From the IMG/VR virus record IMGVR_UViG_3300003877_000001, positions 124,001-188,000 of that record: a stretch of 64,000 bases of DNA. One strand, given 5' to 3'. Below the pieces are notes generated by a model. That model worked only from the letters and a program-made list of their open reading frames with translations, had not been told where the DNA came from and did not search any database. Positions 9,097 through 34,251 of the stretch are shown here, in pieces; position 1 is the first letter of the stretch, and each line of letters opens with the position of its first letter. The position numbers were made by a program, and so were the translations under genes.

Positions 9097-9440
9097 AACA
9101 GAAGAATCAGTAAATTACATGTATATTGAACCTAATTCGCATTTCTATACTGAATTAGAACAAATTAAACATTCATTAGAACTTGGATTACCAAGAGAGC
9201 GTGTAATAATTGGTCTTGAAAATTCCATAAAAATGGGATATCAAATAAATCAAGAACTTGATTGTGAGTGATTTGCTATAATTGTAAATATGATGGTAAT
9301 ATGGATTGGTTCTGGTTAGTTACCAATGAAGATGATTCAACAGTATGTTATTCAACATATGAACTATCATGAGAAGATTATAAAGACGATGATACATTAA
9401 TAGAAATTTATATTTGTCCTAAATGTAATACAGAACAATA

Positions 9441-9526
9441 ATATAGAGCGTTGCCGTAATGAGAAGAGGTTTCGAATCCAGTAAAATGGTAGGTCGTTGC
9501 GTAGGTTCGAATCCTACCCTCTATAT
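9441..9526 (+). ncRNA. tRNA-like element without a recognisable anticodon arm
   Basis: ATATAGAG/CTCTATAT closing stem; T-arm GTAGG-ttcgaat-CCTAC. Confidence 0.4.
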
Positions 9527-9792
9527 TTTTTTAAAAAATCCTAACATATTGTAACAAAATTATATATATTTGCGTATACATAGTTACATATGGATAATTT
9601 AGAAAAAACAAGAGATGAAAATAGTCTTGAAACATTAAGAGAAGGGTTTATAATTTTTTGTGAATTTTATTTCAAAGATGATTTATTAATTCAAGACTAT
9701 ATTAGTGATATTCGATATTTAGAAGATAAAGTTGATACTAAAAAAAGTGTTGATGAAATTATAAATTTTATTAAAGAATTTAATAAAGAAAA

Positions 9793-10461
9793 ATGAAAGT
9801 TACAGTAGATGCAGTCGTATTCTCGTATTATGAAGATGAATTAAAAGTTCTTTTAATTAAAAGAGCATTTGAACCATACTTAGATATGTTTGCTTTAGCA
9901 GGGGGATTTCTTTTAGATAATGAAACAGCAGAGGATGGGGTACTTAGACAATTAAAGGAAGAAACCAATGTTGAGTTGGATTATTTAGAACAACTATGTA
10001 CATTTACTGATGTTGATCGTGATCCTAGAGAGAGAATAATCTCAATAGCACATTATGGATTAATTAATCCCAATAAACATAGTTTAATTACTAATATTCA
10101 TGCAAAAGAAGTTAAATGGTTTCCAACATATGGAATAAAATATATTCCATTAGCCTTTGACCATATGGGAATTTTTGAATATGCATTAGAGAGATTGAGA
10201 AATAAATTACAATACGAACCTATTGGTTTTGAATTATTACCAAAATATTTTACTATGAGTGAACTATTAGCATTATATAATGCAATATTAGGTAAAGAAT
10301 TAGATAGACGTAATTTTAATAAGAAAATATTAAGCTATGGATTACTTACAGAAACAACTTTCAAATCGGTGGGTGGTGTTGGTAAACCAGCAAAACTATA
10401 TGAGTTCAACAAAGAAAAGTACGATGAACTCAAAAAAACAGGATTAAACTTTGAATTGTAA
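9793..10461 (+). CDS. nrtR: NrtR-family regulator (Nudix + winged helix)
   Basis: VTVDAVVF..LLIKR, degenerate Nudix box, RDPRER, LAFDH, FTMSEL..LY..ILGKELDRRNF, GKPAKLY. Confidence 0.85.
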   Translation: MKVTVDAVVFSYYEDELKVLLIKRAFEPYLDMFALAGGFLLDNETAEDGVLRQLKEETNVELDYLEQLCTFTDVDRDPRERIISIAHYGLINPNKHSLITNIHAKEVKWFPTYGIKYIPLAFDHMGIFEYALERLRNKLQYEPIGFELLPKYFTMSELLALYNAILGKELDRRNFNKKILSYGLLTETTFKSVGGVGKPAKLYEFNKEKYDELKKTGLNFEL

Positions 10462-10581
10462 TAAGATAAATGCTCAATTTGTGGATATATTGCACCATTT
10501 GAATTGTTTGGCAATAAATGACCTATTTGTGGATTAGAGTATATTGATGATGACGAAGAAGAATATTACTAAATAAAAATT

Positions 10582-10976
10582 ATGAAAAGTGTAAATAATA
10601 AAATAAAGAAACCATTTGTATCAATAGGATTTGATGCAACAGGAAAATTAACATTTAATGTTGATTTAAACAAAACAAAACAAAAAAACTAAACACCGAA
10701 CAATTAGGTGATTTAGGTGGTGCATTTCAAGATGCATTCAATACCATTAATAATAGTGATAGGAAACCTGTATTACATATTTTTGATTTATATAAGAGAA
10801 AAACAGGAATTAATATTAAACCTATCACTATAATTGAATTGGAAGAAATTAAAACATATATTCGCAATGGTGAAAAATTGATGGCAGTTAAAATCTTTAA
10901 AGATTATACTTCTGAAGGTTTAAGACAATCAAAAGATTTTATTGATTTTTTAATTAACTATATGAAGTATTCATGA
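10582..10976 (+). pseudogene. frameshifted ORF with L7/L12 C-terminal-like motif
   Basis: Frame breaks in the AAAAC repeat near 10670-10690; C-terminus KLMAVKIFKDYTSEGLRQSKDFID. Confidence 0.45.
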
Positions 10977-11566
10977 TAGTACCAATAAGATTATATGGTG
11001 ATGTATGTTTAAAAGAAGAGGCGTATGATGTTGATCTTGAACAAGATGATAATATTGTTGATTTAGTTAAAGATTTATTTGATACATTAAATACATCAGG
11101 TTCTGGTGTTGGTTTAGCTGCTACTCAATTAGGTGTGCCTTTAAGAGTATTTGTTGCAAAACATAATGATTTTCAATCTGAATTCATTAATTCAGTAATT
11201 TTAACTAAAAGTGGTGAATTAGAATCAGCAGAAGAAGGATGCTTATCAATACCAAATGTTGGTATTGATATTGAAAGACCTAAAGCAATTACATTATCAT
11301 ATCAAGTTTTAGATGATGGTGTATTAATTAATAAGACAGAAGAATTTGAAGGTTATATTGCTAGAATAATTCAACACGAAATTGATCATCTTAATGGGAT
11401 ATGTATAACAGATAAAGTTAAAGGGTTAGCAAGAACAATATTACAACCAAAATTGAAAAAGATATTGTTAGGTAGAACACAATATAGATATCCTACACTA
11501 CATAAAACATATCCAGATTATAAAAATGTAAGTGAAGAAATAATTAATAAATATATAAAAGAATGA
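10973..11566 (+). CDS. def: peptide deformylase
   Basis: GVGLAATQ, EGCLS, QHEIDHLNG. Confidence 0.95.
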   Translation: MIVPIRLYGDVCLKEEAYDVDLEQDDNIVDLVKDLFDTLNTSGSGVGLAATQLGVPLRVFVAKHNDFQSEFINSVILTKSGELESAEEGCLSIPNVGIDIERPKAITLSYQVLDDGVLINKTEEFEGYIARIIQHEIDHLNGICITDKVKGLARTILQPKLKKILLGRTQYRYPTLHKTYPDYKNVSEEIINKYIKE

Positions 11567-11952
11567 CGGTACAAAACACAATAATGACTGATCTTAAAAT
11601 AGCCATGAAAAATGGACAAACAAACGCAAAAAATTTATTGCGAGTTGTTATTGGTGAATTTAACAGAGAAGGTAAAACAGTATCTGATGAAAGAGCAATT
11701 GCTATTATGAAAAAAATGGTTGAAAATGCTAAAGATCAAGGAAATGAAATTGAAGTAACTATTCTTGAAGCATATCTTCCACAACAAATGGACGAATTTG
11801 AACTTAAAAGAGTTTTAATGAATCACATTATGAATTTAAATTCACCTTCCATGAAAGATATGGGGAGAGTTATGGGTGAATTAAAAGTAGTATATGGTGG
11901 ACAATATGATGGTAAAATGGCATCTACTATTGTTAGAGAATTATTAAAATAA
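11563..11952 (+). CDS. GatB/YqeY domain protein
   Basis: DLKIAMK, EVTILEAYLPQQM, MKDMGRVMG..DGK. Confidence 0.85.
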   Translation: MTVQNTIMTDLKIAMKNGQTNAKNLLRVVIGEFNREGKTVSDERAIAIMKKMVENAKDQGNEIEVTILEAYLPQQMDEFELKRVLMNHIMNLNSPSMKDMGRVMGELKVVYGGQYDGKMASTIVRELLK

Positions 11953-12351
11953 TGAAATTATTTGATGTAATTATAGATGGTGGTTATAAGGGACATTATG
12001 TTGAAGCTAATGGATATGATGAAGCAGCTAATAAATTGTTAAAATTTTTAAAATTTGAAAATGAAACAAAATCTGTTTTAGATGATGATGGGTCACTTAA
12101 AAAAGATGTGAATGATATTGAAGTGATATCAGTGAAAATAGTTGCTGATTTTATAATAAAATAAAAGAGGGTATTACAAAGCTAGTTGAGAATGTGACGG
12201 TATTAGTGCAGAAGAGGTCAATAGGTAAGGAGTATAATGAAGCAATAGTCATTCAAATTATACAAATCAGTCCGAACAACTAAAAGTGACTTACCCTTTT
12301 TTTATTTAAATAAATAGGTTTTACCCTTAGAAAATAGAAATTACCCTTGGT

Positions 12352-12690
12352 ATGAACAAAAAAAAGAAAATACGACAAAATTTTAGAGATTCCGTGTTTG
12401 CACGTGATAAACATAAGTGTCGTAAATGTGGTGCAGAAAACGTTGATTTAGATGCACATCACATTACAGATAGAAATAAAATGCCAAATGGTGGATATAT
12501 TAAAGAAAATGGTATATCTTTGTGTCAAGAAGAATGTCATATTAAAGCAGAAGAATTTCATTCTTCAAATGGTGAACATTGTGAAAAGGGTTTTCATCCT
12601 AATGATCTTTATGAATTAATTGGATCAAGTGAAAAAGAAGCATTCGATGCATCAATAATGTTAACCAAAAATGGTTTGATAAATATGTAA
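12352..12690 (+). CDS. HNH domain protein
   Basis: RDKHKCRKCG..LDAHHI..NGISLC..CH. Confidence 0.8.
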   Translation: MNKKKKIRQNFRDSVFARDKHKCRKCGAENVDLDAHHITDRNKMPNGGYIKENGISLCQEECHIKAEEFHSSNGEHCEKGFHPNDLYELIGSSEKEAFDASIMLTKNGLINM

Positions 12691-12994
12691 TTCAAGAATG
12701 TGTAGTATCTCAAATTAGATAAAATTATGAAAGCAACAGAAGCAAGAGCATTAGCATATAAAAAAAATATAAATGATACAAATAGTCAATATGCTAAAAT
12801 TATAGAAAAAATAATTTTTGAAGCAAAAAAAGGTAATTATAATATGGATTGGTATGAATCATTTAATGATGTTGTTCGAGAAAAATTAGAATCACAAGGA
12901 TATATTGTTGGAAAAACCCATCACGATCAACGAGATGGTTCTACAACAAAAATAAAATGGTAACCTTTAGGACATCCTAAACGTATATACTAAT

Positions 12995-13627
12995 ATGAAT
13001 TATTTAGAAGCAACAAAATATCCAAAGACAATGCATTTTGATTTCTCTGAATCATTACAAAATGATGATAGAAGATTAACGACATTGGAAGGTTTCATTG
13101 GTAAACGAGTAATCGTTACCGAGAAACTTGATGGAGAAAATTCGACAATTTACAATGACTATTACCATCCAAGATCGGTAATTGATGATGGTCATGAATC
13201 TAGAAATTGGCTTAAAGGGTATATACCCAATTTTCAGTATAAAATTCCTAAATATTGGAGGGTATGTGGTGAAAGTATGTATGCTGAACATTCAATAAAA
13301 TATGAAGAATTAAACACATTCTTCTATGCTTTTAGCATGTGGGATAATTTAAATATGTGTATCTCTTGGGATGAATTTGAACACCATTGTGATATATTAG
13401 ATATTGAACACGTTCCTGTTCTTTATGATGGTGTTTTCGATTATGTTAAAATAAAAGAGATTTATGAAAATTTAGATTTTAATAAACAAGAAGGTATTGT
13501 TGTTAGAGTTGCTTGTAAATTTCGTTATGATGAATTTCAAACACATACTGCCAAAGCAGTTAGACCTGCACATGTATCAACAGATGAACATTGGAAAAAA
13601 ACTTGGAAACCAAATAAATTAAAATAA
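12995..13627 (+). CDS. second RNA ligase family protein
   Basis: KYPKT.H, TEKLDGEN, CGE, EGIVVR. Confidence 0.85.
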   Translation: MNYLEATKYPKTMHFDFSESLQNDDRRLTTLEGFIGKRVIVTEKLDGENSTIYNDYYHPRSVIDDGHESRNWLKGYIPNFQYKIPKYWRVCGESMYAEHSIKYEELNTFFYAFSMWDNLNMCISWDEFEHHCDILDIEHVPVLYDGVFDYVKIKEIYENLDFNKQEGIVVRVACKFRYDEFQTHTAKAVRPAHVSTDEHWKKTWKPNKLK

Positions 13628-13858
13628 TGGATAGAAATTGGATATTTAGAATATTAGGAATTGTAGTGAATTTTGCACTACTCTATATTGTTGGTGCATT
13701 TATTGCTTGGGATGCAAACCCATTGCATTGGTGGATAATAACATCGACATTAGGAAGAGTATTATTTATGTTTTTTGCTTTTGCAAATGTTGCAATAAAT
13801 TTAAGTGAAAATTTAAGTGATAATTAAAATAATAATGAAATTTATAAAAAATGTTTAG

Positions 13859-14323
13859 ATGAATAATAAACACATACGCATTTACATAGACATGGATAAT
13901 GTTTTATGTGATTATCAAAAAGCACATGACGAAGCAATAAAGAATAAACCTGAAATTGTTTATCCACAATCACAATATGGTTTCTTTAGAGATTTAGAAC
14001 CAACTAATTGTGCATTGATGGGATTTACTGTATTATCTAAAAACTTTGATGTTTGGATATTAACAGCACCATCAGTACAAAATCCAATGTGCTATACTGA
14101 AAAAAGAGAATGGGTAGAGAAAAATTTAGGTTTTGATGCTGCTAAACGATTAATATTATCACCAGATAAATCACTTTTAATTGGTGATTATCTTATTGAT
14201 GATATGGTAGAAGGTAGAGCAAAACAAAACGAATTTAATGGAACTCACATTGTTTTTGGGAATGAAGTATATCCTGATTGGTTATCAGTATTGGAATATT
14301 TCAAACAATACTTTAAAACATAA
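13859..14323 (+). CDS. 5'(3')-deoxyribonucleotidase (HAD)
   Basis: IYIDMDNVLCD, ILTAP, K..WV, GDYLIDD. Confidence 0.85.
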   Translation: MNNKHIRIYIDMDNVLCDYQKAHDEAIKNKPEIVYPQSQYGFFRDLEPTNCALMGFTVLSKNFDVWILTAPSVQNPMCYTEKREWVEKNLGFDAAKRLILSPDKSLLIGDYLIDDMVEGRAKQNEFNGTHIVFGNEVYPDWLSVLEYFKQYFKT

Positions 14324-14397
14324 AAACATGAAAAATTACGAAGAACTAACAATACTTTAAAACATAAAAACATGAAAAATTACGAAGAACTAACAAT
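14304..14397 (+). repeat. 44-bp exact tandem duplication spanning a gene junction
   Basis: AACAATACTTTAAAACATAAAAACATGAAAAATTACGAAGAACT twice; ATGs at 14328 and 14372. Confidence 0.85.
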
Positions 14398-14836
14398 TGA
14401 ATTAATTGATTATTATAAAAATAAATATGATGGTGAATTAATTATAAAATCAATTGAATACAAAACAGTATATATTAATGGAAATCATATTAAAAAATTA
14501 GAACATGTCTATGAAATTTATGTTCTTTTAGATTTATTAACCCCAAATGCAAATTCTTGGAATATTCCGAATTTTTTTAAAAGTAAAGTTTCTTTTGAAA
14601 ATGCAATTAAAATGTTTAAAGTTGCTGTAAATGGATATTTAGAAGCCTTATTAATTGAAAAAGAGTTTGTAGAAATAAGTTCAGAGAAAAGACTTTTAGT
14701 TGATTTATTATCAAAAGATATTAATTCTTTAAACGAAGAAGATTTTGATTTCATGATTTCACATTATCTAAAAATAGAAGAATATTTGAAAGTTCAAAAA
14801 TATGAAAATTTAAAAAAAAAATATTATGAAAAATAA
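14372..14836 (+). CDS. hypothetical protein
   Basis: 154-aa ORF overlapping the next start. Confidence 0.6.
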   Translation: MKNYEELTIELIDYYKNKYDGELIIKSIEYKTVYINGNHIKKLEHVYEIYVLLDLLTPNANSWNIPNFFKSKVSFENAIKMFKVAVNGYLEALLIEKEFVEISSEKRLLVDLLSKDINSLNEEDFDFMISHYLKIEEYLKVQKYENLKKKYYEK

Positions 14837-15734
14837 AAAAATAATTCTTCTCTGTGGAATCCCTGCTAGTGGAAAATCTACATGGGCAAATAAATTTATA
14901 TTAAATAATTCTAATTATGTTAGAATTAATAGAGATATGTATCGTTTAATGCTTGATGGTTCTCAAATAATGGATTTTAAGGGAGAAAAGTTAGTAACTG
15001 AATTAGTTAATAATGCAATTGTTTTGGCTACAAAGTCTAAGTATAACGTACTTGTTGACCAAACTAATGTTAACTTAAAGTACTTGAATGAAATGGTTGC
15101 ATTTTGTGAAAAAATTGCAGATGTTGAGTTTAAAATATTCGATATAACAGAAAAAGTCGCCATCGAAAGAGACTCAAATAGAGATGCTAAAGTAGGTGCA
15201 AAAGTAATCAAAAAAATGTACAAAAACTACTTAAATCTATTCTCTTCTAATTTCGATTTCTCAACAAGAAAAAGAAAACCACATATTGCTACCAACATCA
15301 AGTGGGAGCGTGATGGTACTTTACCAGATGCAGTGATTTTTGACATTGATAGTACTATAGCACATACTCAAGGTAAAAGAGGGATATTTGATTGGGATAA
15401 AGTTAATCTTGATATTGTAGATGAAATTGTTCTTGAAACAATTAAATCATATAAGGACTATGGTTATAAGATTATCTTTGTTACGGGTAGAGATGGTGTT
15501 TCACGAAAAATGACAGAAGATTGGTTAATACATAATAAAATACCTTTTGATATGTTATTCACTAAACCTAAAAATGATTTCAGAAAAGATATTATAAATA
15601 AAACAGAAATTTATCATAATTTCATTAAACCAAATTATAATGTATTAGCAGTTTATGATGACCGTAATTCTGTTTGTAAAATGTGGAGAAATTTAGGAGT
15701 AAAATGCTACCAAGTTCAAGAGGGTGATTTTTAA
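14826..15734 (+). CDS. pseT: polynucleotide 5'-kinase/3'-phosphatase
   Basis: P-loop GIPASGKST and RINRD; HAD FDIDST, VTGR, YDDR. Confidence 0.9.
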   Translation: MKNKKIILLCGIPASGKSTWANKFILNNSNYVRINRDMYRLMLDGSQIMDFKGEKLVTELVNNAIVLATKSKYNVLVDQTNVNLKYLNEMVAFCEKIADVEFKIFDITEKVAIERDSNRDAKVGAKVIKKMYKNYLNLFSSNFDFSTRKRKPHIATNIKWERDGTLPDAVIFDIDSTIAHTQGKRGIFDWDKVNLDIVDEIVLETIKSYKDYGYKIIFVTGRDGVSRKMTEDWLIHNKIPFDMLFTKPKNDFRKDIINKTEIYHNFIKPNYNVLAVYDDRNSVCKMWRNLGVKCYQVQEGDF

Positions 15735-15767
15735 TCCTCATTTTTTTTTTATTAAATAATAAATAAT

Positions 15768-16190
15768 ATGATAAAACAATTAGAAGTTTACAAGAAGTTT
15801 CAGATGAAATATCCTAAATCAATTTTAGGTGGTAGTTTTGGATTATTCCTTAGAGGAATTGATTTAAAAAGAAATTTAAAATATTCTGATTTGGATATTA
15901 CGACCCCTGAATTTACACCTAAAGGTGGATTAGATAATGATAAAAGTAGTTCAGAGGATTTTGACTTTACATTATATATACATAACAATAATCATTATCT
16001 TAAAATGGATATACGTGTAGTTGAAGACCATAAATATGATGTTGTAAATTACGAAGGATTTGACTTTAACGTAAAAACAAAGAAAGATATATTATATTGG
16101 AAACAACAATATGCTGAAAAGGGGGTAGAAAAACATATTGATGATTTAATAACAATAGCAACTGGTGTTAGACCCAAACGATCCATATGA
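15768..16190 (+). CDS. nucleotidyltransferase-like protein
   Basis: LGGSFGL...SDLDI motif. Confidence 0.5.
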   Translation: MIKQLEVYKKFQMKYPKSILGGSFGLFLRGIDLKRNLKYSDLDITTPEFTPKGGLDNDKSSSEDFDFTLYIHNNNHYLKMDIRVVEDHKYDVVNYEGFDFNVKTKKDILYWKQQYAEKGVEKHIDDLITIATGVRPKRSI

Positions 16191-16244
16191 TTTACCGTTT
16201 TAATAACTTATAAAATATTTTTAAAAATACTTGACTTTATTATT

Positions 16245-16310
16245 ATAATAGTGTAACTTTGACACATATTAAACGTATTTATAAATGAATTAGTGTATTA
16301 AATACATATA
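16245..16310 (+). promoter_or_regulatory. two candidate NrtR operators overlapping an ECF-like promoter
   Basis: TAGT-GT-aactttg-AC-ACATA and TAGT-GT-attaaat-AC-ATA (GT-N7-AC); TGTAAC-N16-CGTAT at 16252-16278. Confidence 0.6.
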
Positions 16311-16328
16311 GACTAAAATAGTTATATT

Positions 16329-17234
16329 ATGAGAGAAGAAATAAAAGAATATACAATCGGAGTTATAATTGGAAGATTCCAAATACATGAACTTCATGAT
16401 GCACATAAAGAGATGATTAGTGAAGTACTAAGTAGACACCAAAAGGTTATACTATTTTTAGGGGTATCACCTACATTATCAACAAGAAGAAATCCTTTAG
16501 ATTATCGCTCAAGAAAATTAATGATTGAAGAGATATATGGAAATGAAATGATTATCTTACCTATCAACGATAGAAAGTCTGATGAAATCTGGTCAGACCA
16601 AGTAGATAGTAAAATCAGAGAGGTAGAGCCAATTGGTTCTGTTGTATTATATGGATCAAGAGATTCATTTATTCCTCATTATAAAGGAAAGTATGATACT
16701 ATTGAATTAGTTCCTAAATCATTTATTTCTGCAAGCGAAGTAAGAAAAGAAATTTCTAAAAGAGTTGAAAGAAACAAAGATTTTAGAGCAGGAGTTATTT
16801 ACTCAACATATAATACATATCCAACAGTACATCCCGTTATAGATGTTGCCATTTTAAATGAAGATGCAACTGAAGTATTATTGGGAAGAAAAAAAAACGA
16901 ACAACTTTTTAGATTTGTTGGTGGATTTACCGATGTAACTGATGAATCGTATGAACAAACAGTTGTAAGAGAAGCACATGAAGAAACTGGTCTTGCTGTT
17001 GGTGATGTTAAATACATTACTTCAACAAGAGTAGATGATTGGAGATATAGATCAAATAATGAGCGTTCAGTAATGACTTCATTTTTCAAAGCAAAGAAAA
17101 TCTTTGGTATGGCAAAACCCAATGATGATATTGTAGCAGTTAAATGGCATCAAATTTATACTTTACGACCTAATGATGTTGTTGGTGAACACGAAAGATT
17201 GGTTGTTGCATTAAAAGAAAACTTAAAACTATAA
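16329..17234 (+). CDS. nadM: bifunctional NMN adenylyltransferase / Nudix ADP-ribose hydrolase
   Basis: GRFQ..H.AH, RNPL, ISASEVR; Nudix GGF..VREAHEETGL; DD. Confidence 0.9.
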   Translation: MREEIKEYTIGVIIGRFQIHELHDAHKEMISEVLSRHQKVILFLGVSPTLSTRRNPLDYRSRKLMIEEIYGNEMIILPINDRKSDEIWSDQVDSKIREVEPIGSVVLYGSRDSFIPHYKGKYDTIELVPKSFISASEVRKEISKRVERNKDFRAGVIYSTYNTYPTVHPVIDVAILNEDATEVLLGRKKNEQLFRFVGGFTDVTDESYEQTVVREAHEETGLAVGDVKYITSTRVDDWRYRSNNERSVMTSFFKAKKIFGMAKPNDDIVAVKWHQIYTLRPNDVVGEHERLVVALKENLKL

Positions 17235-17238
17235 AATC

Positions 17239-18726
17239 ATGAAAAATATAATAAATTTAATATTAAAAACAGATAGTTATAAATTAGGTCATTGGCAACA
17301 ATATCCAACAGGAATGAGAAAAGTGTATTCTTATATGGAAAGCAGAGGGGGTTTATTTCCTAAAACATTATTTACTGGATTAAACATTTATCTAAAAAAA
17401 TATCTCAAGGGTGCTGTTGTAACAATGGAAGATATTGATTATGCTGAAAAATTTACAGAAGAACATTTAGGTAGAAAACTATTTAATAGAGATAAGTGGG
17501 AATATATTGTTAAACGATATGGTGGTAAATTACCCATAAGAATTAAAGCAGTTAAAGAAGGTTCTTTAGTTCCAGTTAGTAATGTTTTATTGACAATAGA
17601 AAGTACCGACCACAATTGTTATTGGTTAACAAATGTTCTTGAAACTTTATTAATGAAACTATGGTATCCAACAACAGTAGCAACAAATGGATTTTATAGT
17701 AAACTTTTAATTAGTCAATATTTAAATAAAACAGCAGAAAACAAAGATTCTAATATTTGGAAATTACACGACTTTGGTTATAGAGGTGTATCTAGTGAAG
17801 AAACGGCAGGAATTGGTGGTATGGCACATCTTATTAACTTTAAGGGTAGTGACACCATTGAGGGAATTCTTTATGCTAGAGAGTATTATAATGAACATAT
17901 GGCAGGGTTTTCAGTTCCAGCGTCTGAACATTCAGTAGCATCTTCATTTGGTAAAGATTTCGAAGAAGAATATTTTTTAAATATGTTAAAACAATACCCA
18001 ACAGGTTTAGTATCAATAGTATCAGATACATATAGTGTTTTTAATTTTGTAGAAACAATGTCAACGAAATATAGAAAAGAAATCATAGAAAGAGATGGGA
18101 CTGTGGTATTTAGACCAGATAGTGGGCATCCTGTTGAAATAAACTCAAGACTGATTGATTTACTTTGGAATAAATTTGGTGGAACATATGTAAATGGTTA
18201 TAAATTATTAGATTCTCATGTAAGACTAATCCAAGGTGATGGTATTGACATTAAGATGATTAATGATATATTACATATGGGCGAACTTAAAGGATATTCT
18301 GCCGATAATTGGGTGTTTGGTTCAGGTGGTGCATTATTACAAAAGTGGACTAGAGATACTAATGAATTTGCAATTAAAGCATCCTATGGTGAAAGAGAAG
18401 TTGATGGAATTGTTAGTAAATTTTCAATAAGCAAAGACCCTATAACTTCTAAAAGTAAACGCTCAAAGGGTGGGATATTTAAATTAATACCAACAGAAGA
18501 TAGTTCATTCTTAACGATTTCATCTGAAAATTCAAAAGATAAAGGTACTTTTAGTAATTATGTTGATTGTTTAGATGTTGTATTTGAAAATGGTGAAATA
18601 AAAAGAGAGCAAACCATAGAAAATATTCGTAATATTGCAGATAATCATCTTGAAGTTGAATTAAAAGAAAATTACGATGTTATCGATAAACTAAATTTTG
18701 AAAAAAATTATGAAAAATTAAATTAA
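17239..18726 (+). CDS. nadV: nicotinamide phosphoribosyltransferase
   Basis: TDSYK..H, LHDFGYRG, PASEHS, VSDTY, RPDSG, IQGDG, FGSGG. Confidence 0.93.
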   Translation: MKNIINLILKTDSYKLGHWQQYPTGMRKVYSYMESRGGLFPKTLFTGLNIYLKKYLKGAVVTMEDIDYAEKFTEEHLGRKLFNRDKWEYIVKRYGGKLPIRIKAVKEGSLVPVSNVLLTIESTDHNCYWLTNVLETLLMKLWYPTTVATNGFYSKLLISQYLNKTAENKDSNIWKLHDFGYRGVSSEETAGIGGMAHLINFKGSDTIEGILYAREYYNEHMAGFSVPASEHSVASSFGKDFEEEYFLNMLKQYPTGLVSIVSDTYSVFNFVETMSTKYRKEIIERDGTVVFRPDSGHPVEINSRLIDLLWNKFGGTYVNGYKLLDSHVRLIQGDGIDIKMINDILHMGELKGYSADNWVFGSGGALLQKWTRDTNEFAIKASYGEREVDGIVSKFSISKDPITSKSKRSKGGIFKLIPTEDSSFLTISSENSKDKGTFSNYVDCLDVVFENGEIKREQTIENIRNIADNHLEVELKENYDVIDKLNFEKNYEKLN

Positions 18727-18743
18727 AAATTAAATTAAAAATT

Positions 18744-19940
18744 ATGAATTATCAAAATATACAATATAAACCATCTACATTGAATGCAATAATAAATGCA
18801 TTCAATGCTAAAAATTTACGTAATTGGAATGTATTATATTTTTACTTTGATATACACCAAACAATATTATATCCTGACTATAATAATGAAGAAGAATTAA
18901 AATTCTATCCATACATAAAAGAAATATTACAACATCTAAGTAAACAAAATGATATTGTACTTGGAATTTATACGTGTTCATATCCTGATCAAATAAAAAA
19001 ATATTTTAAATTTTTTGAAAAAAATAATATTAATTTTAAATATGTAAATAAAAATCCAGAAGCAATGAATACAAAATATGGGTATTATGTAGATAAACCA
19101 TATTTTAATGTCCTTTTTGACGATAAATGCGGTCTAAATGCTGAGATTGATTGGTATTTCATTGCAGAATATTTTGGTTTAATTAATAATTCTAAAAATG
19201 ATTATTATGTGTATGTATATCTCGATCCAAGAAAAAGTGGCTTTTATAATTCAGAAAGTTTCATTTTCCCAAACGAACCCTTTTATGTTGGTAAGGGTAA
19301 AAATAATAGACATTTTGACCATTTAAAAGAATCCGAACTGAACAAAGAAAACGGTAATATTATAAAACAAAGAAAAATAAAAAAAATATTATCATTAAAT
19401 AAAACTCCTATAATATATAAAATATTTGATAATGTTAACGAAAATTTTGCATACCATGTTGAAAATTTATTAATCCTAGATATTGGTAGAGTTAATAATA
19501 AAACAGGTGTTTTAACTAATCTAAATGACGGTGGATATGGTAACAAAAATTGTGCAATAACCAATAAAACAAAAGAAAAAATTTCTAAGTCGTTAAAAAA
19601 TTATCATATAAATAATCCTATTAGTGACGAAACTAAACAAAAAATTGGTGATGCTAATAGAGGTAGAAAATATTCTAAGGAATATATTAAACATCTTAAA
19701 GAAATAAGAAAAGGAACAAAAATTACCCATAGAAAAAAATATTATTTAATATCACCAACAAATGTTAAACATTCTTTTATAGGTAAAGATAGATTAATTG
19801 AATTTGTTAAAAAGGAAAATTTATCATATATAATTTTAATGAAAAAAATAAACAGTGGAAAAATTTTAAATTCCGATATTTTAAGAAAAACTCAACAAAC
19901 ATTAAATTCAATTGGGTGGGAAATAATAAAATCAAAATAA
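18744..19940 (+). CDS. HAD-like domain fused to GIY-YIG-like/NUMOD3 endonuclease
   Basis: N-terminal FDIHQTI..KPYFNVLFDDK; then YYVYVYLDPR..FYVGKG..R, LTNL.DGG, ETKQKIG. Confidence 0.7.
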   Translation: MNYQNIQYKPSTLNAIINAFNAKNLRNWNVLYFYFDIHQTILYPDYNNEEELKFYPYIKEILQHLSKQNDIVLGIYTCSYPDQIKKYFKFFEKNNINFKYVNKNPEAMNTKYGYYVDKPYFNVLFDDKCGLNAEIDWYFIAEYFGLINNSKNDYYVYVYLDPRKSGFYNSESFIFPNEPFYVGKGKNNRHFDHLKESELNKENGNIIKQRKIKKILSLNKTPIIYKIFDNVNENFAYHVENLLILDIGRVNNKTGVLTNLNDGGYGNKNCAITNKTKEKISKSLKNYHINNPISDETKQKIGDANRGRKYSKEYIKHLKEIRKGTKITHRKKYYLISPTNVKHSFIGKDRLIEFVKKENLSYIILMKKINSGKILNSDILRKTQQTLNSIGWEIIKSK

Positions 19941-19960
19941 AACGATAAGTATTTATTACT

Positions 19961-20239
19961 ATGGGATTTAATAATTTAATTGTAAACGGTAAAAAGGTAA
20001 TTGGTGTAAAACCTTGGACTAATAAACAAAGATTAAAAATTTATTGGTTAATTTGGTCATGGACATTATTTTTCATGTATCTAATAATTAGAATGTTAAT
20101 ATGGGAAGATATTTATCTTATTGCTGGTGAAGGTATATTAATGTTTATGTTATTTGCTTTATCTGTTGTTTTAACAATGGGTTGGTATCGTAAACAAGAA
20201 AGAAAAAACTATATTTACGAAGAAAAAAATAAATATTAA
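19961..20239 (+). CDS. small membrane protein
   Basis: Two hydrophobic segments. Confidence 0.6.
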   Translation: MGFNNLIVNGKKVIGVKPWTNKQRLKIYWLIWSWTLFFMYLIIRMLIWEDIYLIAGEGILMFMLFALSVVLTMGWYRKQERKNYIYEEKNKY

Positions 20240-23489: not shown

Positions 23490-23562
23490 CAAACAAATGT
23501 TTTATTGATAAATAAATATTTTGTTAACGTATAAGTAGACGTACTTATATAGGAGTTGTTTT

Positions 23563-23632
23563 ATGTAAATAGCATAATGGCAATGCAGCACCATAAAAGG
23601 TGTGTATGTAGGTTCGATTCCTATTTTACTAA
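23563..23632 (+). pseudogene. degenerate tRNA (6-nt anticodon loop)
   Basis: D- and T-arms present; GCACC-ataaaa-GGTGT; mispaired top of acceptor. Confidence 0.5.
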
Positions 23633-23650
23633 AACAACTATAACAATTAT

Positions 23651-33716: not shown

Positions 33717-33786
33717 GTTGCCATAGGTTGGTGTAAAATATTAGTCTCTAAAACTAATAACGAGAGTTCGAATCTCTCTGGCAGCA
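33717..33786 (+). tRNA. amber-suppressor tRNA (anticodon CTA)
   Basis: GTTGCCA/TGGCAGC-A; TTAGT-ctCTAaa-ACTAA; GAGAG-ttcgaat-CTCTC; weak D-arm. Confidence 0.78.
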
Positions 33787-34251
33787 CTTAAATATTAAAA
33801 ATATGAAAGATAATGTAGAATATAAAATAGTTTCTAGTGATTCAACTGATTTCATGGGAAATAGAGTAAGTAAATTAATGTCAGAGGGTTGGGTATTATA
33901 TGGAAGTCCATATTTTAATAGTCAAAAAGAATCTAATTGTCAAGCAATGGTTAGACACCCAAAAACTAAAGAAATTTTAAACGATTAACATGTCAAAAGT
34001 ATATGTTGATTTAAGAGTAGAAGCATTTGAAGAAGATTTAAATGATTTTCTAACATTATTAGGAAAAATTAATTATACAGGACGTATTGGTGCAAGCAGA
34101 AGCATTAAAGTAAATATTGATGGTGATGGTTCTGGTTATATTGGTGTTAAAAGACTAAGTGATAAAAAACCAATACATGAATGGGTAAATTTAGATGAAA
34201 AACAATTAAAAAAAGTGTCTGACGGTGAAGACTTTGACGACCATTATATAG

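What the first reader, a model, noticed from the sequence alone, without database searches (positions are those of the whole stretch)
9793..18726. Phage NrtR plus operator: a possibly ADP-ribose-inducible NAD+ reconstitution operon
Seen: the nadM-Nudix and nadV operon; an NrtR-family gene 6 kb upstream; and two GT-N7-AC sites with TAGTGT half-sites, one covering the -35 and one just downstream of the promoter (16245-16310). Established: Nampt + Nmnat rebuild NAD+ against NADase defences (Thoeris, DSR, SIR2 systems), and NrtR repressors bind GT-N7-AC palindromes and are released by ADP-ribose, the NADase product. Inference: the phage senses NAD+ destruction and derepresses its antidote.
Basis: partly seen in the sequence, partly recalled or inferred. 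Interest (0 to 1): 0.78.

Follow-up and report, generated by a model that had tools for sequence, protein, structure and literature searches.

The report
Phage NrtR repressor guarding NAD+ salvage operon
A 326-kb phage carries a bacterial-type NrtR repressor and two conserved binding sites for it that bracket the promoter of its NAD+-rebuilding operon (nadM-nadV), so this costly anti-defence pathway is very probably kept off until a metabolite, most likely ADP-ribose, releases the repressor.

Summary
Window 9793-10461 encodes an NrtR-family protein (Nudix + NrtR winged helix). Window 16329-18726 encodes NadM-Nudix and NadV (the NARP2 type of NAD+ reconstitution). The 138-bp gap before nadM holds two 21-bp sites with a GT-N7-AC core, at 16248-16268 and 16290-16310, with centres 42 bp apart.

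Each site alone scores no better than chance in this 27% GC genome. The context is decisive:
- A matrix built only from relatives' sites ranks these two as the best two of 325,834 genome positions.
- Six other phage lineages (NrtR 50-81% identical) carry the same motif, tTTGTGTA-N5-TACACAAa, before their nadM-nadV(-prs) operons.
- In 80 cellular genomes, mostly Bacteroidota, 98 of 124 matrix hits lie within 200 bp of nrtR, usually as tandem pairs before nadM/prs-nadV.
- The recognition-helix residues that read GTGT in the BtAraR-DNA crystal are conserved.

The sites flank GTATTTATA (16275-16283), a promoter-like motif with 78 copies in this genome.

Repression of nadM-nadV by NrtR is well supported (about 0.85). 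ADP-ribose as inducer is inferred only (about 0.5): SoNrtR Arg98 is kept, but the adenine-binding N-terminal arm is missing. I found no paper describing this in a phage. It is a new variant of a known regulon.

The parts
9793..10461 (+). nrtR: 222-aa Nudix-like sensor domain plus NrtR winged-helix DNA-binding domain. Start overlaps the stop of the 68-aa ORF 9590-9796 (ATGA).
   Evidence: Pfam PF21906/PF19368/PF00293. NCBIfam NF050029 4e-42, below equivalog cut-off. PDB BtAraR 1e-42 and SoNrtR 2e-35. Nudix box has Q53 in place of the catalytic Glu; ligand and DNA-contact residues are conserved.
16231..16236 (+). TTGACT, a -35/-33-like element 14 nt before the GTGTA of operator 1. With TAACTT(TG) at 16254-16261 it forms a candidate host-type promoter (17-nt spacer).
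   Evidence: TTG is invariant, and TTGAC is shared by five of the six aligned phage promoters, at fixed distance from operator 1 (alignment A2). Function inferred.
16248..16268 (.). Operator 1: ATAGTGTAACTTTGACACATA (core GTGT-N7-ACAC). Its centre contains TAACTTTG, which matches the Bacteroidota -7 box TAnnTTTG.
   Evidence: Best PWM hit of the whole genome with a matrix built from other phages. Homologous site in L014, L013, L003, L016 and L018.
16275..16283 (+). GTATTTATA: the phage's own recurrent promoter-like motif, lying between the two operators.
   Evidence: 78 copies against about 21 expected. 62% end within 60 nt of an ORF start, against 4% for random positions. It precedes portal, large terminase and tail-fibre genes. 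Conserved after operator 1 in five relatives.
16290..16310 (.). Operator 2: TTAGTGTATTAAATACATATA (core GTGT-N7-ACAT; inner palindrome TGTAT-TAA-ATACA). It lies 18 nt before the nadM start codon.
   Evidence: Second-best PWM hit of the genome. A second site next to the first start codon of the operon is also seen in L013, L003, L016 and L005, and at the contig end in L014.
16329..17234 (+). nadM-Nudix: NMN adenylyltransferase domain (GRFQ-HELH, ISASEVR motifs) fused to a Nudix domain with an intact REx2EExGL box, predicted to be an ADP-ribose pyrophosphatase.
   Evidence: Pfam CTP_transf_like plus NUDIX. NCBIfam bifunctional NMNAT/Nudix models, all below their cut-offs. Sequence read.
17239..18726 (+). 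nadV: nicotinamide phosphoribosyltransferase (Nampt).
   Evidence: Pfam NAMPT_N plus NAPRTase. NF006629 544 bits against a 405 cut-off. 39% identical to the NadV of a 247-kb Vibrio phage (vB_ValM_R10Z).
18744..19940 (+). Probable third gene of the operon. Residues about 1-150 are homologous to the 137-aa gene that follows nadV or prs in relatives (weak HAD-like hit). They are fused in frame to a GIY-YIG/NUMOD3 homing-endonuclease module.
   Evidence: tblastn of the L013 orf137 hits window 18774-19181, 57% identity, 2e-51. Pfam LEM-3_GIY-YIG and NUMOD3. HAD_2 5e-4, below cut-off. No terminator-like site between 18726 and 20500.

Best explanation
The phage encodes a complete, self-contained NrtR regulon of Bacteroidota type.

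Proposed mechanism:
- NrtR is made from the gene block upstream and binds as dimers to two 21-bp operators.
- Operator 1 overlaps a host-type promoter (TTGACT-17-TAACTTTG) and sits in the -35 zone of the phage-type promoter motif GTATTTATA.
- Operator 2 covers the start of the transcript and the 5' leader, 18 nt before nadM. With both occupied, nadM-nadV (and probably the gene after it) is silent.
- When a small molecule fills the catalytically disabled Nudix pocket of NrtR, the repressor leaves the DNA. This molecule is most likely ADP-ribose, which is produced when NAD+ is cleaved.
- NadV then makes NMN from nicotinamide and PRPP, and NadM makes NAD+.
- The Nudix half of NadM is predicted to hydrolyse ADP-ribose. 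That would remove the inducer and close a negative feedback loop.

The arrangement would restrict a pathway known to be costly (it drains PRPP and overproduces NAD+) to cells in which NAD+ is actually being destroyed.

Shown here: the gene identities, the operator motif, and its conservation and position. Inferred: actual binding, the sign of regulation, the effector and the counter-defence purpose. My sub-probabilities: NrtR binds these sites and represses the operon, 0.85; ADP-ribose is the releasing ligand, 0.5; the selective benefit is mainly countering NADase defence rather than general NAD+ economy, 0.4. The overall confidence of 0.6 is for the statement as a whole: ligand-released NrtR repression of this operon, with ADPR as the leading candidate.
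For: - Gene identities.
- A PWM from relatives only ranks the two sites first and second of 325,834 positions.
- The same motif and layout occur in L014 (NrtR 81% identical), L013 (73%), L003/G001 (64%), L016 (62%), L018 (52%) and L005/L010 (50%), always at the head of nadM-nadV(-prs).
- In 80 cellular loci, a PWM made from phage sites alone finds 124 sites of at least 14 bits in 833 kb. Of these, 98 lie within 200 bp of nrtR, and 44 loci have tandem pairs, typically before nadM-nadV or prs-nadV.
- The BtAraR residues D178, K179, R180, N181 and K184 define GTGT in the crystal (PMC4666351). They align to D171, R172, R173, N174 and K177, which are conserved in 89-100% of 120 homologues.
- Seven phage NrtRs form one clade (SH-aLRT 99) nested among Bacteroidota sequences, so the gene has been kept through long phage divergence.
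- Ligand side: R24, R76, R79, F122, D123 and H124 are invariant. R79 corresponds to SoNrtR Arg98, which binds ADPR, and is Gly in the arabinose sensor.
- The catalytic Glu53 is Q here and K in 80 of 120 homologues, which fits a sensor rather than an enzyme.
- ADPR releases SyNrtR from nadM-nadV and SoNrtR from tandem prs-nadV sites in vitro (PMC2330246).
- NARP2 is reported as metabolically costly and toxic to clone (bioRxiv 10.1101/2024.02.11.579819).
Against: - No binding, expression or ligand data exist for this protein, and no RNA run was listed for this DNA.
- Each G000 site is a weak match (5/10 and 7/10 palindromic pairs), with scores attainable by chance in a 27% GC genome.
- Operator 1 is homologous by descent to the relatives' operator 1 and overlaps conserved promoter elements, so part of its conservation may be promoter conservation.
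- The effector pocket is a mixture. There is no N-terminal arm (SoNrtR Tyr10 and Phe15, which hold the adenine, have no counterpart). F26 sits where SoNrtR has the phosphate-binding Asn43 and where BtAraR uses Phe36 to fill the phosphate space. E57 sits where SoNrtR has Lys76.
- Some NrtR-family members respond to NAD+ or to sugars instead (PMC4666351).
- nrtR has no operator of its own in this phage, and its expression timing is unknown.
- The promoter assignment rests on motif statistics, not on mapped transcript starts.
Confidence: 0.6

Rival explanations
1. Same repressor and operators, but a different signal. NrtR answers to NAD+ itself (as a co-repressor, like the NdnR member of the family) or to another pathway metabolite such as NMN, ribose 5-phosphate or PRPP-related compounds. 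The operon is then a homeostat for the infected cell's NAD+ pool rather than a sensor of NADase attack.
For: - Family members differ in ligand: NdnR responds to NAD+ and BtAraR to L-arabinose (PMC4666351). Rib-P was proposed for pentose regulators (PMC2330246).
- The adenine-binding N-terminal arm of SoNrtR is absent.
- F26 occupies the position of the phosphate-binding Asn43.
Against: - The two tested NrtRs that control nadM-nadV or prs-nadV respond to ADPR, and not to NAD+ or Rib-P (the latter tested for SyNrtR).
- R79 (= SoNrtR Arg98) and the Nudix-box glutamates E56 and E57 are kept. That fits a pyrophosphate-bearing ligand better than a neutral or monophosphate sugar.
Confidence: 0.25
2. 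The phage NrtR acts mainly on the host. Its operator consensus is the same as that of Bacteroidota nrtR-prs/nadM-nadV regulons, so the phage protein could reprogramme host NAD+ salvage. Conversely, the host NrtR could control the phage operon from the moment of injection. The phage sites would then be one node of a shared circuit.
For: A PWM from phage sites alone retrieves the operators of cellular regulons. Phage NrtRs are nested within Bacteroidota sequences.
Against: The host of this phage is not identified. The phage keeps operators on its own operon in every lineage examined, so self-regulation is required in any case. G000 half-sites (TAGTGTA) deviate slightly from the Bacteroidota TTTGYGTA.
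Confidence: 0.1
3. The two sites are promoter architecture only (a host-type -10/-7 box and an AT-rich leader) that resembles an NrtR motif by chance. The nrtR gene 6 kb away is an unrelated Nudix enzyme or regulator.
For: Per-site scores are within chance for this composition. The centre of operator 1 carries a promoter box that is itself conserved.
Against: - Operator 2 and its equivalents carry no promoter box, yet keep GTGTA-N5-TACA.
- The same palindrome flanks nrtR in 48 of 80 cellular loci.
- The two best PWM hits of the genome coincide in one 138-bp gap before the expected target operon.
- The co-occurrence of nrtR, motif and nadM-nadV persists through gene-order rearrangements (L016, L018, G001).
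Confidence: 0.05

Closest known systems
Bacterial NrtR regulons of NAD+ salvage (Synechocystis #nadM-nadV; Shewanella and Cytophaga hutchinsonii nrtR-#prs-nadV; Rodionov et al. 2008, PMC2330246)
   Same: Same regulator family and same target genes. Same 21-bp palindrome with a GT-N7-AC core, and tandem sites. The cellular Bacteroidota loci examined here share the exact consensus TTTGYGTA-N5-TACRCAAA.
   Different: It is encoded by a lytic-type 326-kb phage. nrtR lies 5.9 kb from its target and has no operator of its own. The sites are 42 bp apart instead of 50-54 bp. They bracket a phage-specific promoter motif. The N-terminal arm of SoNrtR is lacking.
BtAraR of Bacteroides thetaiotaomicron (PDB 5BS6/5DD4/5DDG/5DEQ; Chang et al. 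2015, PMC4666351)
   Same: Nearest solved structure by sequence (1e-42). The recognition helix D-[KR]-R-N-F-x-K is conserved. Its operator is GTGT-N7-ACAC. Tandem sites are also reported.
   Different: BtAraR senses L-arabinose, and its nucleotide cleft is filled by Tyr5 and Phe36 with Gly89. The phage protein has Arg79 at the Gly89 position and no N-terminal Tyr. Its target is NAD+ salvage, not pentose use.
NARP2, the phage NAD+ reconstitution pathway 2 (Nampt + Nmnat of Vibrio phage KVP40; Osterman et al., bioRxiv 10.1101/2024.02.11.579819)
   Same: An adjacent Nampt (NadV) gene and a bifunctional Nmnat-Nudix gene in a large phage.
   Different: No regulator is described for NARP2 there. Among 50,697 GenBank phage records, only 11 hold a full-length NrtR-like match, and the rows listed for those are not Vibrio phages. 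The NadM subtype here is rare, with 8 phage records.
Bacillus phage G gp273 cluster
   Same: A cultured jumbo phage with an NrtR-like gene (38% identity, 85% coverage; annotated MutT/NUDIX hydrolase) heading a run of NAD+ genes.
   Different: A different pathway: pncA-like, pncB, nadD and nadE, the Preiss-Handler route. No GTGT-N7-ACAC site was found; a different palindrome (GTATTA-ATT-TAATAC) follows gp273. Not analysed further.
Aca repressors of anti-CRISPR operons (from my own knowledge, not checked here)
   Same: A phage-encoded HTH repressor that limits expression of an anti-defence operon.
   Different: Aca proteins are autorepressors without a known small-molecule input. Here a ligand-sensing domain is attached.

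Membership tests
[quoted passage not shown] | N-terminal Nudix-like domain fused to the C-terminal NrtR winged-helix domain | tested here: met
   PF00293 residues 6-111 and PF21906 residues 145-205, both above cut-off. Full-length alignment to SoNrtR (3GZ5) and BtAraR (5BS6).
[quoted passage not shown] | Impaired Nudix signature (GX5EX7REUXEEXGU), indicating a sensor rather than a hydrolase | tested here: met
   The box reads G38-x5-E44-x7-R52-Q53-L-K-E56-E57-T-N59-V. The Glu after Arg is Q here, K in 80 and E in 19 of 120 homologues; the final Gly is N. The impairment is only partial, so residual activity is not excluded.
[quoted passage not shown] | 21-bp palindromic operator with a GT-N7-AC core upstream of NAD-metabolism genes | tested here: met
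   Two sites before nadM. The same motif is conserved in six other phage lineages and in cellular regulons.
[quoted passage not shown] | Specific DNA binding by the protein (dimer) | not testable with these tools
   Indirect only: the residues that read GTGT in BtAraR are conserved.
[quoted passage not shown] | ADP-ribose antagonises DNA binding (the NAD-type members) | tested here: inconclusive
   R24 (So R41), R76, R79 (So R98) and H124 are kept. So N43 is F26 and So K76 is E57. The N-terminal Tyr10 and Phe15 are absent. A binding assay is needed.
NCBIfam NF050029 (ADPR-responsive repressor, equivalog) | Score above the curated equivalog cut-off (400 bits) | tested here: not met
   144 bits. 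It is a family-level relative, not an equivalog of the proteins behind that model.
NARP2 (phage Nampt + Nmnat NAD+ reconstitution) | Nampt (NadV) gene | tested here: met
   NF006629 544 bits against a 405 cut-off; PF18127 and PF04095.
NARP2 (phage Nampt + Nmnat NAD+ reconstitution) | An adjacent Nmnat gene in the same operon | tested here: met
   nadM ends 4 nt before nadV. PF01467 scores 23.2 bits against a 21 cut-off. GRFQ..HxxH and ISxSxxR motifs are present, plus a Nudix domain. Matches to the curated bifunctional models are below their cut-offs, so this is a divergent member.
NARP2 (phage Nampt + Nmnat NAD+ reconstitution) | Restores NAD+ and overcomes NADase defence systems | not testable with these tools
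   Shown for KVP40 genes in B. subtilis, not for this phage.

The most novel reading that the evidence does not exclude
A virus carries its own metabolite-sensing transcription factor that makes an anti-defence pathway inducible by the chemical product of the host's defence. ADP-ribose from NADase systems such as Thoeris, DSR or SIR2-HerA releases NrtR. NARP2 is switched on only in defended cells, and the NadM Nudix domain then destroys the inducer. That would be a sense-and-respond counter-defence circuit with feedback. Because its operators match those of Bacteroidota hosts, it would also be wired into the host's own NrtR network. A more remote variant (about 0.05) is that the shortened pocket senses a defence-signalling ADPR derivative rather than ADPR.
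Probability: 0.35. Interest if true: 0.8.

Novelty: new variant of a known kind. Interest (0 to 1): 0.62.

Why it matters
Anti-defence genes of phages are usually thought of as expressed constitutively or on a timer. NARP2 has a stated cost: it consumes PRPP, overproduces NAD+ even in undefended cells, and the KVP40 operon was toxic to clone.

A phage-borne NrtR with operators on the NARP2 promoter offers a concrete and easily testable solution to that cost. It would be an example of ligand-gated counter-defence.

The work also yields practical outputs:
- It defines the operator consensus of a large, experimentally untouched Bacteroidota NrtR clade.
- It shows that whole regulons (regulator, operators and enzymes) move into jumbo phages and persist there.
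- It points to a cultured system, Bacillus phage G, where a phage NrtR can be studied.

Tried and rejected
- Megablast of 9500-19000 against GenBank phages found no match.
- RNA evidence: the only runs listed that hold this DNA are hydrothermal-vent metagenome DNA runs, and no RNA run was listed. Read laying was therefore not used, and transcript starts remain unmapped.
- The generic sigma-70 scan was uninformative: 80 promoter-like sites against 89 expected.
- I first read the promoter as TTGACT-17-TAACTT only. The genome-wide enrichment of GTATTTATA showed a second, phage-type element between the operators. I keep both and cannot rank them.
- Search for further regulon members in G000: the third-best PWM hit (63129) lies inside a coding ORF and the fourth is weak, so no other target is proposed.
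- No operator was found upstream of nrtR in this phage.
- No prs or NADAR gene was found in G000, although relatives have them.
- The Bacteroidota-type promoter pattern TTG-N18-21-TAnnTTTG is not enriched genome-wide.
- Huang et al. 2009 (the SoNrtR structure paper) is not held. ADPR contacts were taken second-hand from PMC4666351.
- Phage G: no GT-N7-AC palindrome was found.

Full report
**What the window is**

The window is bases 124,001-188,000 of a 325,854-bp IMG/VR virus record (27.5% GC, judged complete by CheckV). It came from a hydrothermal-vent metagenome. It carries 26 tRNA genes. Elsewhere in the genome it has portal, large-terminase and tail-fibre genes. No close relative exists among GenBank phages at the DNA level.

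**The genes**

- Window 9793-10461 (+, 222 aa) has a Nudix domain followed by the NrtR winged-helix domain (PF21906, 2e-22). It aligns over its full length to the two solved family members, BtAraR (5BS6, 1e-42) and SoNrtR (3GZ5, 2e-35). It scores 144 bits on NCBIfam's 'ADPR responsive transcriptional repressor' model. That is far below the model's 400-bit equivalog cut-off, so it is a family member and not an equivalog.
- Window 16329-17234 is a divergent NMN adenylyltransferase fused to a Nudix domain with an intact REx2EExGL box.
- Window 17239-18726 is NadV/Nampt (544 bits against a 405 cut-off).
- Window 18744-19940 follows with no terminator-like site. Its first ~150 residues are homologous to a 137-aa gene that follows nadV or prs in relatives. 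The rest is a GIY-YIG/NUMOD3 homing-endonuclease module.
- All of these genes end in TAA, so the amber-suppressor tRNA in the window does not affect them.

**The sites, and chance**

The 138-bp gap before nadM reads:

...TTGACTttattattataATAGTGTAACTTTGACACATAttaaacGTATTTATAaatgaaTTAGTGTATTAAATACATATAgactaaaatagttatattATG

- Site 1 is 16248-16268. Site 2 is 16290-16310. Their centres are 42 bp apart.
- On their own the sites are unimpressive.
- The PWM scores (15.6 and 14.1 bits) equal the top score of simulated genomes of this composition.
- What is not chance is the location. The pattern occurs only five times in the genome on both strands.
- A PWM built from sites of other phages and one bacterium, with no G000 sequence, ranks these two first and second among all genome positions. 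Both lie in the one gap where an NrtR operator is expected.
- The third-best hit lies inside a coding ORF.

**Conservation in phages**

NrtR has many metagenomic homologues of 50-87% identity, many of them on contigs of 80-380 kb. I examined these loci:

| Locus | NrtR identity | Layout |
|---|---|---|
| L014 | 81% | TTGACA-N14-TTTGTGTATGTTTGACACAAA-GTATTTATAA, a small ORF, then TTTGTGTGGTTAATACAC at the contig end |
| L013 | 73% | TTTGTGTATTTTTAACATTAA, GTATTTATAA, then TTTGTGTAATAATTACAGTAA abutting the nadM ATG |
| G001/L003 | 64% | TTTGTGTAACTTTGACATGAA and TTTGTGTAAAAATTACAGGAA, 75 bp apart, then an unknown ORF, then nadM |
| L016 | 62% | TTCGTGTACTTTTGACACGAA and TTTGTGTATAAATTACAATAA; operon orf-nadM-nadV-prs-...-nrtR |
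| L018 | 52% | nrtR-[ATTGTGTATTTTTGACACAAT-GTATTTATCA]-nadM-nadV-orf-prs |
| L005 (636-kb uncultured phage LR756504) and near-copy L010 | 50% | TATGTGTAATAAATACATAAA and ACTGTGTATAATGTACACAAA, again 42 bp apart, directly before nadM-nadV |

- Gene order around nrtR differs among these phages. The triad of nrtR, motif and nadM-nadV stays together.
- An alignment of six promoters has three invariant blocks: TTG(AC), GTGTAnnTTTrACA and GTATTTAT.
- Seven of the phage NrtRs form one clade (SH-aLRT 99) nested among Bacteroidota sequences. The LR756504 protein branches separately (quick tree, midpoint root, L018 on a long branch).

**Conservation in cells**

The 80 best cellular homologues (43-52% identity) are mostly Bacteroidota.

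- A PWM made only from the twelve phage sites finds 124 sites of at least 14 bits in 833 kb.
- Of these, 98 lie within 200 bp of nrtR, a zone that covers about a tenth of the sequence.
- 44 loci have tandem pairs, mostly 50-54 bp apart. The typical arrangement is #nrtR-##nadM-nadV, or -prs-nadV, or -nadV.
- This is the regulon type predicted in 2008 for Cytophaga hutchinsonii (nrtR-#prs-nadV). It was validated by EMSA for Synechocystis (#nadM-nadV) and Shewanella (tandem sites at prs-nadV) (PMC2330246).

The phage therefore carries a whole regulon of cellular type: regulator, operators and enzymes.

**Why this protein should read this DNA**

In the BtAraR-DNA crystal the operator is AAAAGTGT-TACTTTT-ACACCC. 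Residues Asp178, Lys179, Arg180 (which intercalates), Asn181, Lys184 and the wing residues Lys204/Arg205 'define the GTGT motif' (PMC4666351).

These residues align to D171, R172, R173, N174, K177 and G197/K198 of the phage protein. The helix residues are conserved in 89-100% of the 120 closest homologues.

**The promoter**

Two elements are conserved.

1. TTGAC(T/A) lies 14 nt before the GTGTA of site 1. This places a TAnnTT(TG) box in the centre of the operator with a 17-nt spacer. The invariant TTT in the centre of operator 1 is not required in operator 2. This argues that the box is under selection of its own. TAnnTTTG is the Bacteroidota -7 consensus (my own knowledge).
2. GTATTTATA lies 7-9 nt after the ACA(C/T) arm of site 1.
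   - In this genome it occurs 78 times against about 21 expected.
   - It follows gene orientation.
   - It ends within 60 nt of an ORF start in 62% of cases, against 4% for random positions.
   - It precedes portal, terminase and tail-fibre genes as well as tRNAs.
   - It therefore behaves like the phage's own, probably middle or late, promoter. It resembles the T4 late TATAAATA (my own knowledge).

At nadM the distance from the motif to the ATG is 45 nt instead of the usual 10-20 nt. The extra length is operator 2.

Whichever element is used, operator 1 covers either its -10/+1 region or its -35 zone, and operator 2 lies over the start of the transcript. This is a repressing geometry. Transcript starts were not mapped, because no RNA run was listed.

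**The effector**

All of this is inference.

For ADP-ribose:
- The tested NrtRs that control nadM-nadV or prs-nadV are released by ADPR. SyNrtR is not released by NAD+ or ribose 5-phosphate.
- R24, R76, F122-D123-H124 and R79 are invariant in 120 homologues. R79 matches SoNrtR Arg98, which bonds the ribose and phosphate of ADPR, and is Gly89 in the arabinose sensor.
- The Nudix glutamates E44, E56 and E57 are kept, while the catalytic Glu53 is Q (K in most homologues). That suits a protein which binds a pyrophosphate ligand but does not cleave it.

Against ADP-ribose:
- The protein starts 17 residues later than SoNrtR. It has no counterpart of Tyr10 and Phe15, which hold the adenine.
- F26 stands where SoNrtR has Asn43 on the alpha-phosphate. 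BtAraR uses Phe36 at this position to fill the phosphate space.
- E57 stands where SoNrtR has Lys76.

I put ADPR at about 0.5. The rest is shared among NAD+, other pathway metabolites, or an ADPR derivative.

**Purpose**

- Nampt + Nmnat (NARP2) lets phages overcome Thoeris, DSR and SIR2-type NADase defences.
- The same study notes that NARP2 overproduces NAD+ even without a defence, consumes PRPP, and that the KVP40 operon could not be cloned in E. coli (bioRxiv 10.1101/2024.02.11.579819). A ligand-gated repressor would remove that cost.
- The Nudix half of NadM is predicted to hydrolyse ADPR, which would shut the circuit off again.
- The operator consensus is shared with Bacteroidota regulons. 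The host's NrtR could therefore act on the phage operon and the phage's NrtR on the host's. This is an inference, and the host is unknown.

**Novelty**

Full-text searches found no paper that describes a phage-encoded NrtR or any regulator of NARP2.

- Among 50,697 GenBank phage records only 11 hold a full-length NrtR-like match.
- One is Bacillus phage G gp273, annotated as MutT/NUDIX hydrolase. It heads a pncA-like, pncB, nadD, nadE cluster. This looks like a second, independent phage NrtR regulon, in a cultured phage.
- The family, the operator type and the enzymes are all known. Their combination in a virus, and the implied inducible counter-defence, is a new variant.

**Verdict**

- Observation: confirmed.
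- Regulatory link: strongly supported.
- Inducer and purpose: plausible but untested.
- Interest: 0.62.

Noticed in passing
window 33717-33787 (also 23562-23633): ARAGORN calls a tRNA with a CTA anticodon (amber suppressor, labelled Pyl) and a tRNA with an irregular anticodon loop, among 26 tRNA genes. This may indicate TAG read-through or recoding in part of the genome. Among ORFs of at least 150 aa, 28 end in TAG, 155 in TAA and 21 in TGA.
   Followed up: partly
whole genome G000; in the window at 733, 1099, 2630, 16275, 22425, 23745, 26301, 27691, 35144, 40086 (+) and 49597 (-): GTATTTATA is a strongly over-represented, strand-consistent motif, typically 10-20 nt before start codons. It precedes portal, terminase, tail-fibre and tRNA genes. 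It is probably the phage's own (late-type) promoter. No copy lies on the + strand between 2630 and 16275, the block that contains nrtR.
   Followed up: partly
window 18744-19940: A conserved ~137-aa gene of unknown function (weak HAD-like hit) follows nadV or prs in relatives (L013 16032-16445, L016 8482-8895, L018 13321-13746). Here it is fused in frame to a GIY-YIG/NUMOD3 homing-endonuclease module.
   Followed up: partly
window 9440-9520: Two tRNA T-arm-like stretches (GGTTTCGAATCC; GTAGGTTCGAATCCTAC) lie upstream of the orf68-nrtR pair, with no tRNA called. They are possibly remnants of tRNA genes. The second was flagged as terminator-like.
   Followed up: no
L118 (Bacillus phage G, NC_023719.1 200123-207372): gp273 (annotated as MutT/NUDIX hydrolase) is NrtR-like. 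It heads a cluster with an isochorismatase-type (PncA-like) gene, nicotinate phosphoribosyltransferase, NaMN adenylyltransferase and NAD synthetase. The palindrome GTATTA-ATT-TAATAC lies between gp273 and gp274.
   Followed up: partly
L003 5397-5765, L016 4670-5062, L014 16056-16361: In three relatives an extra small ORF sits between the regulated promoter and nadM. It is a 122-130-aa protein without family matches in L003 and L016, and a 101-aa Cys-rich protein in L014. In L003 and L016, operator 2 abuts its likely ATG. If the longer ORF call is right, operator 2 would instead encode residues NLC(K/I)NY.
   Followed up: partly
L018 9968-9990: Upstream of nrtR in this relative there is a near-palindrome TTGGTGTAAAAATACACAATT whose arms are one base closer (GT-N6-AC). 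It is unclear whether it is an autoregulatory site.
   Followed up: no
L014 11148-11588, L017 12423-12851, L017 1176-6359: Relatives carry a NADAR-domain gene near nrtR, but G000 has none (tblastn negative). In L017 the ribonucleotide reductase gene is interrupted by an intein and a LAGLIDADG endonuclease.
   Followed up: no
window 9590-20239: None of the start codons in this block is preceded by a Shine-Dalgarno-like purine run. Together with the TAnnTTTG box and the Bacteroidota affinity of NrtR, this hints at a Bacteroidota host, but the host was not determined.
   Followed up: no
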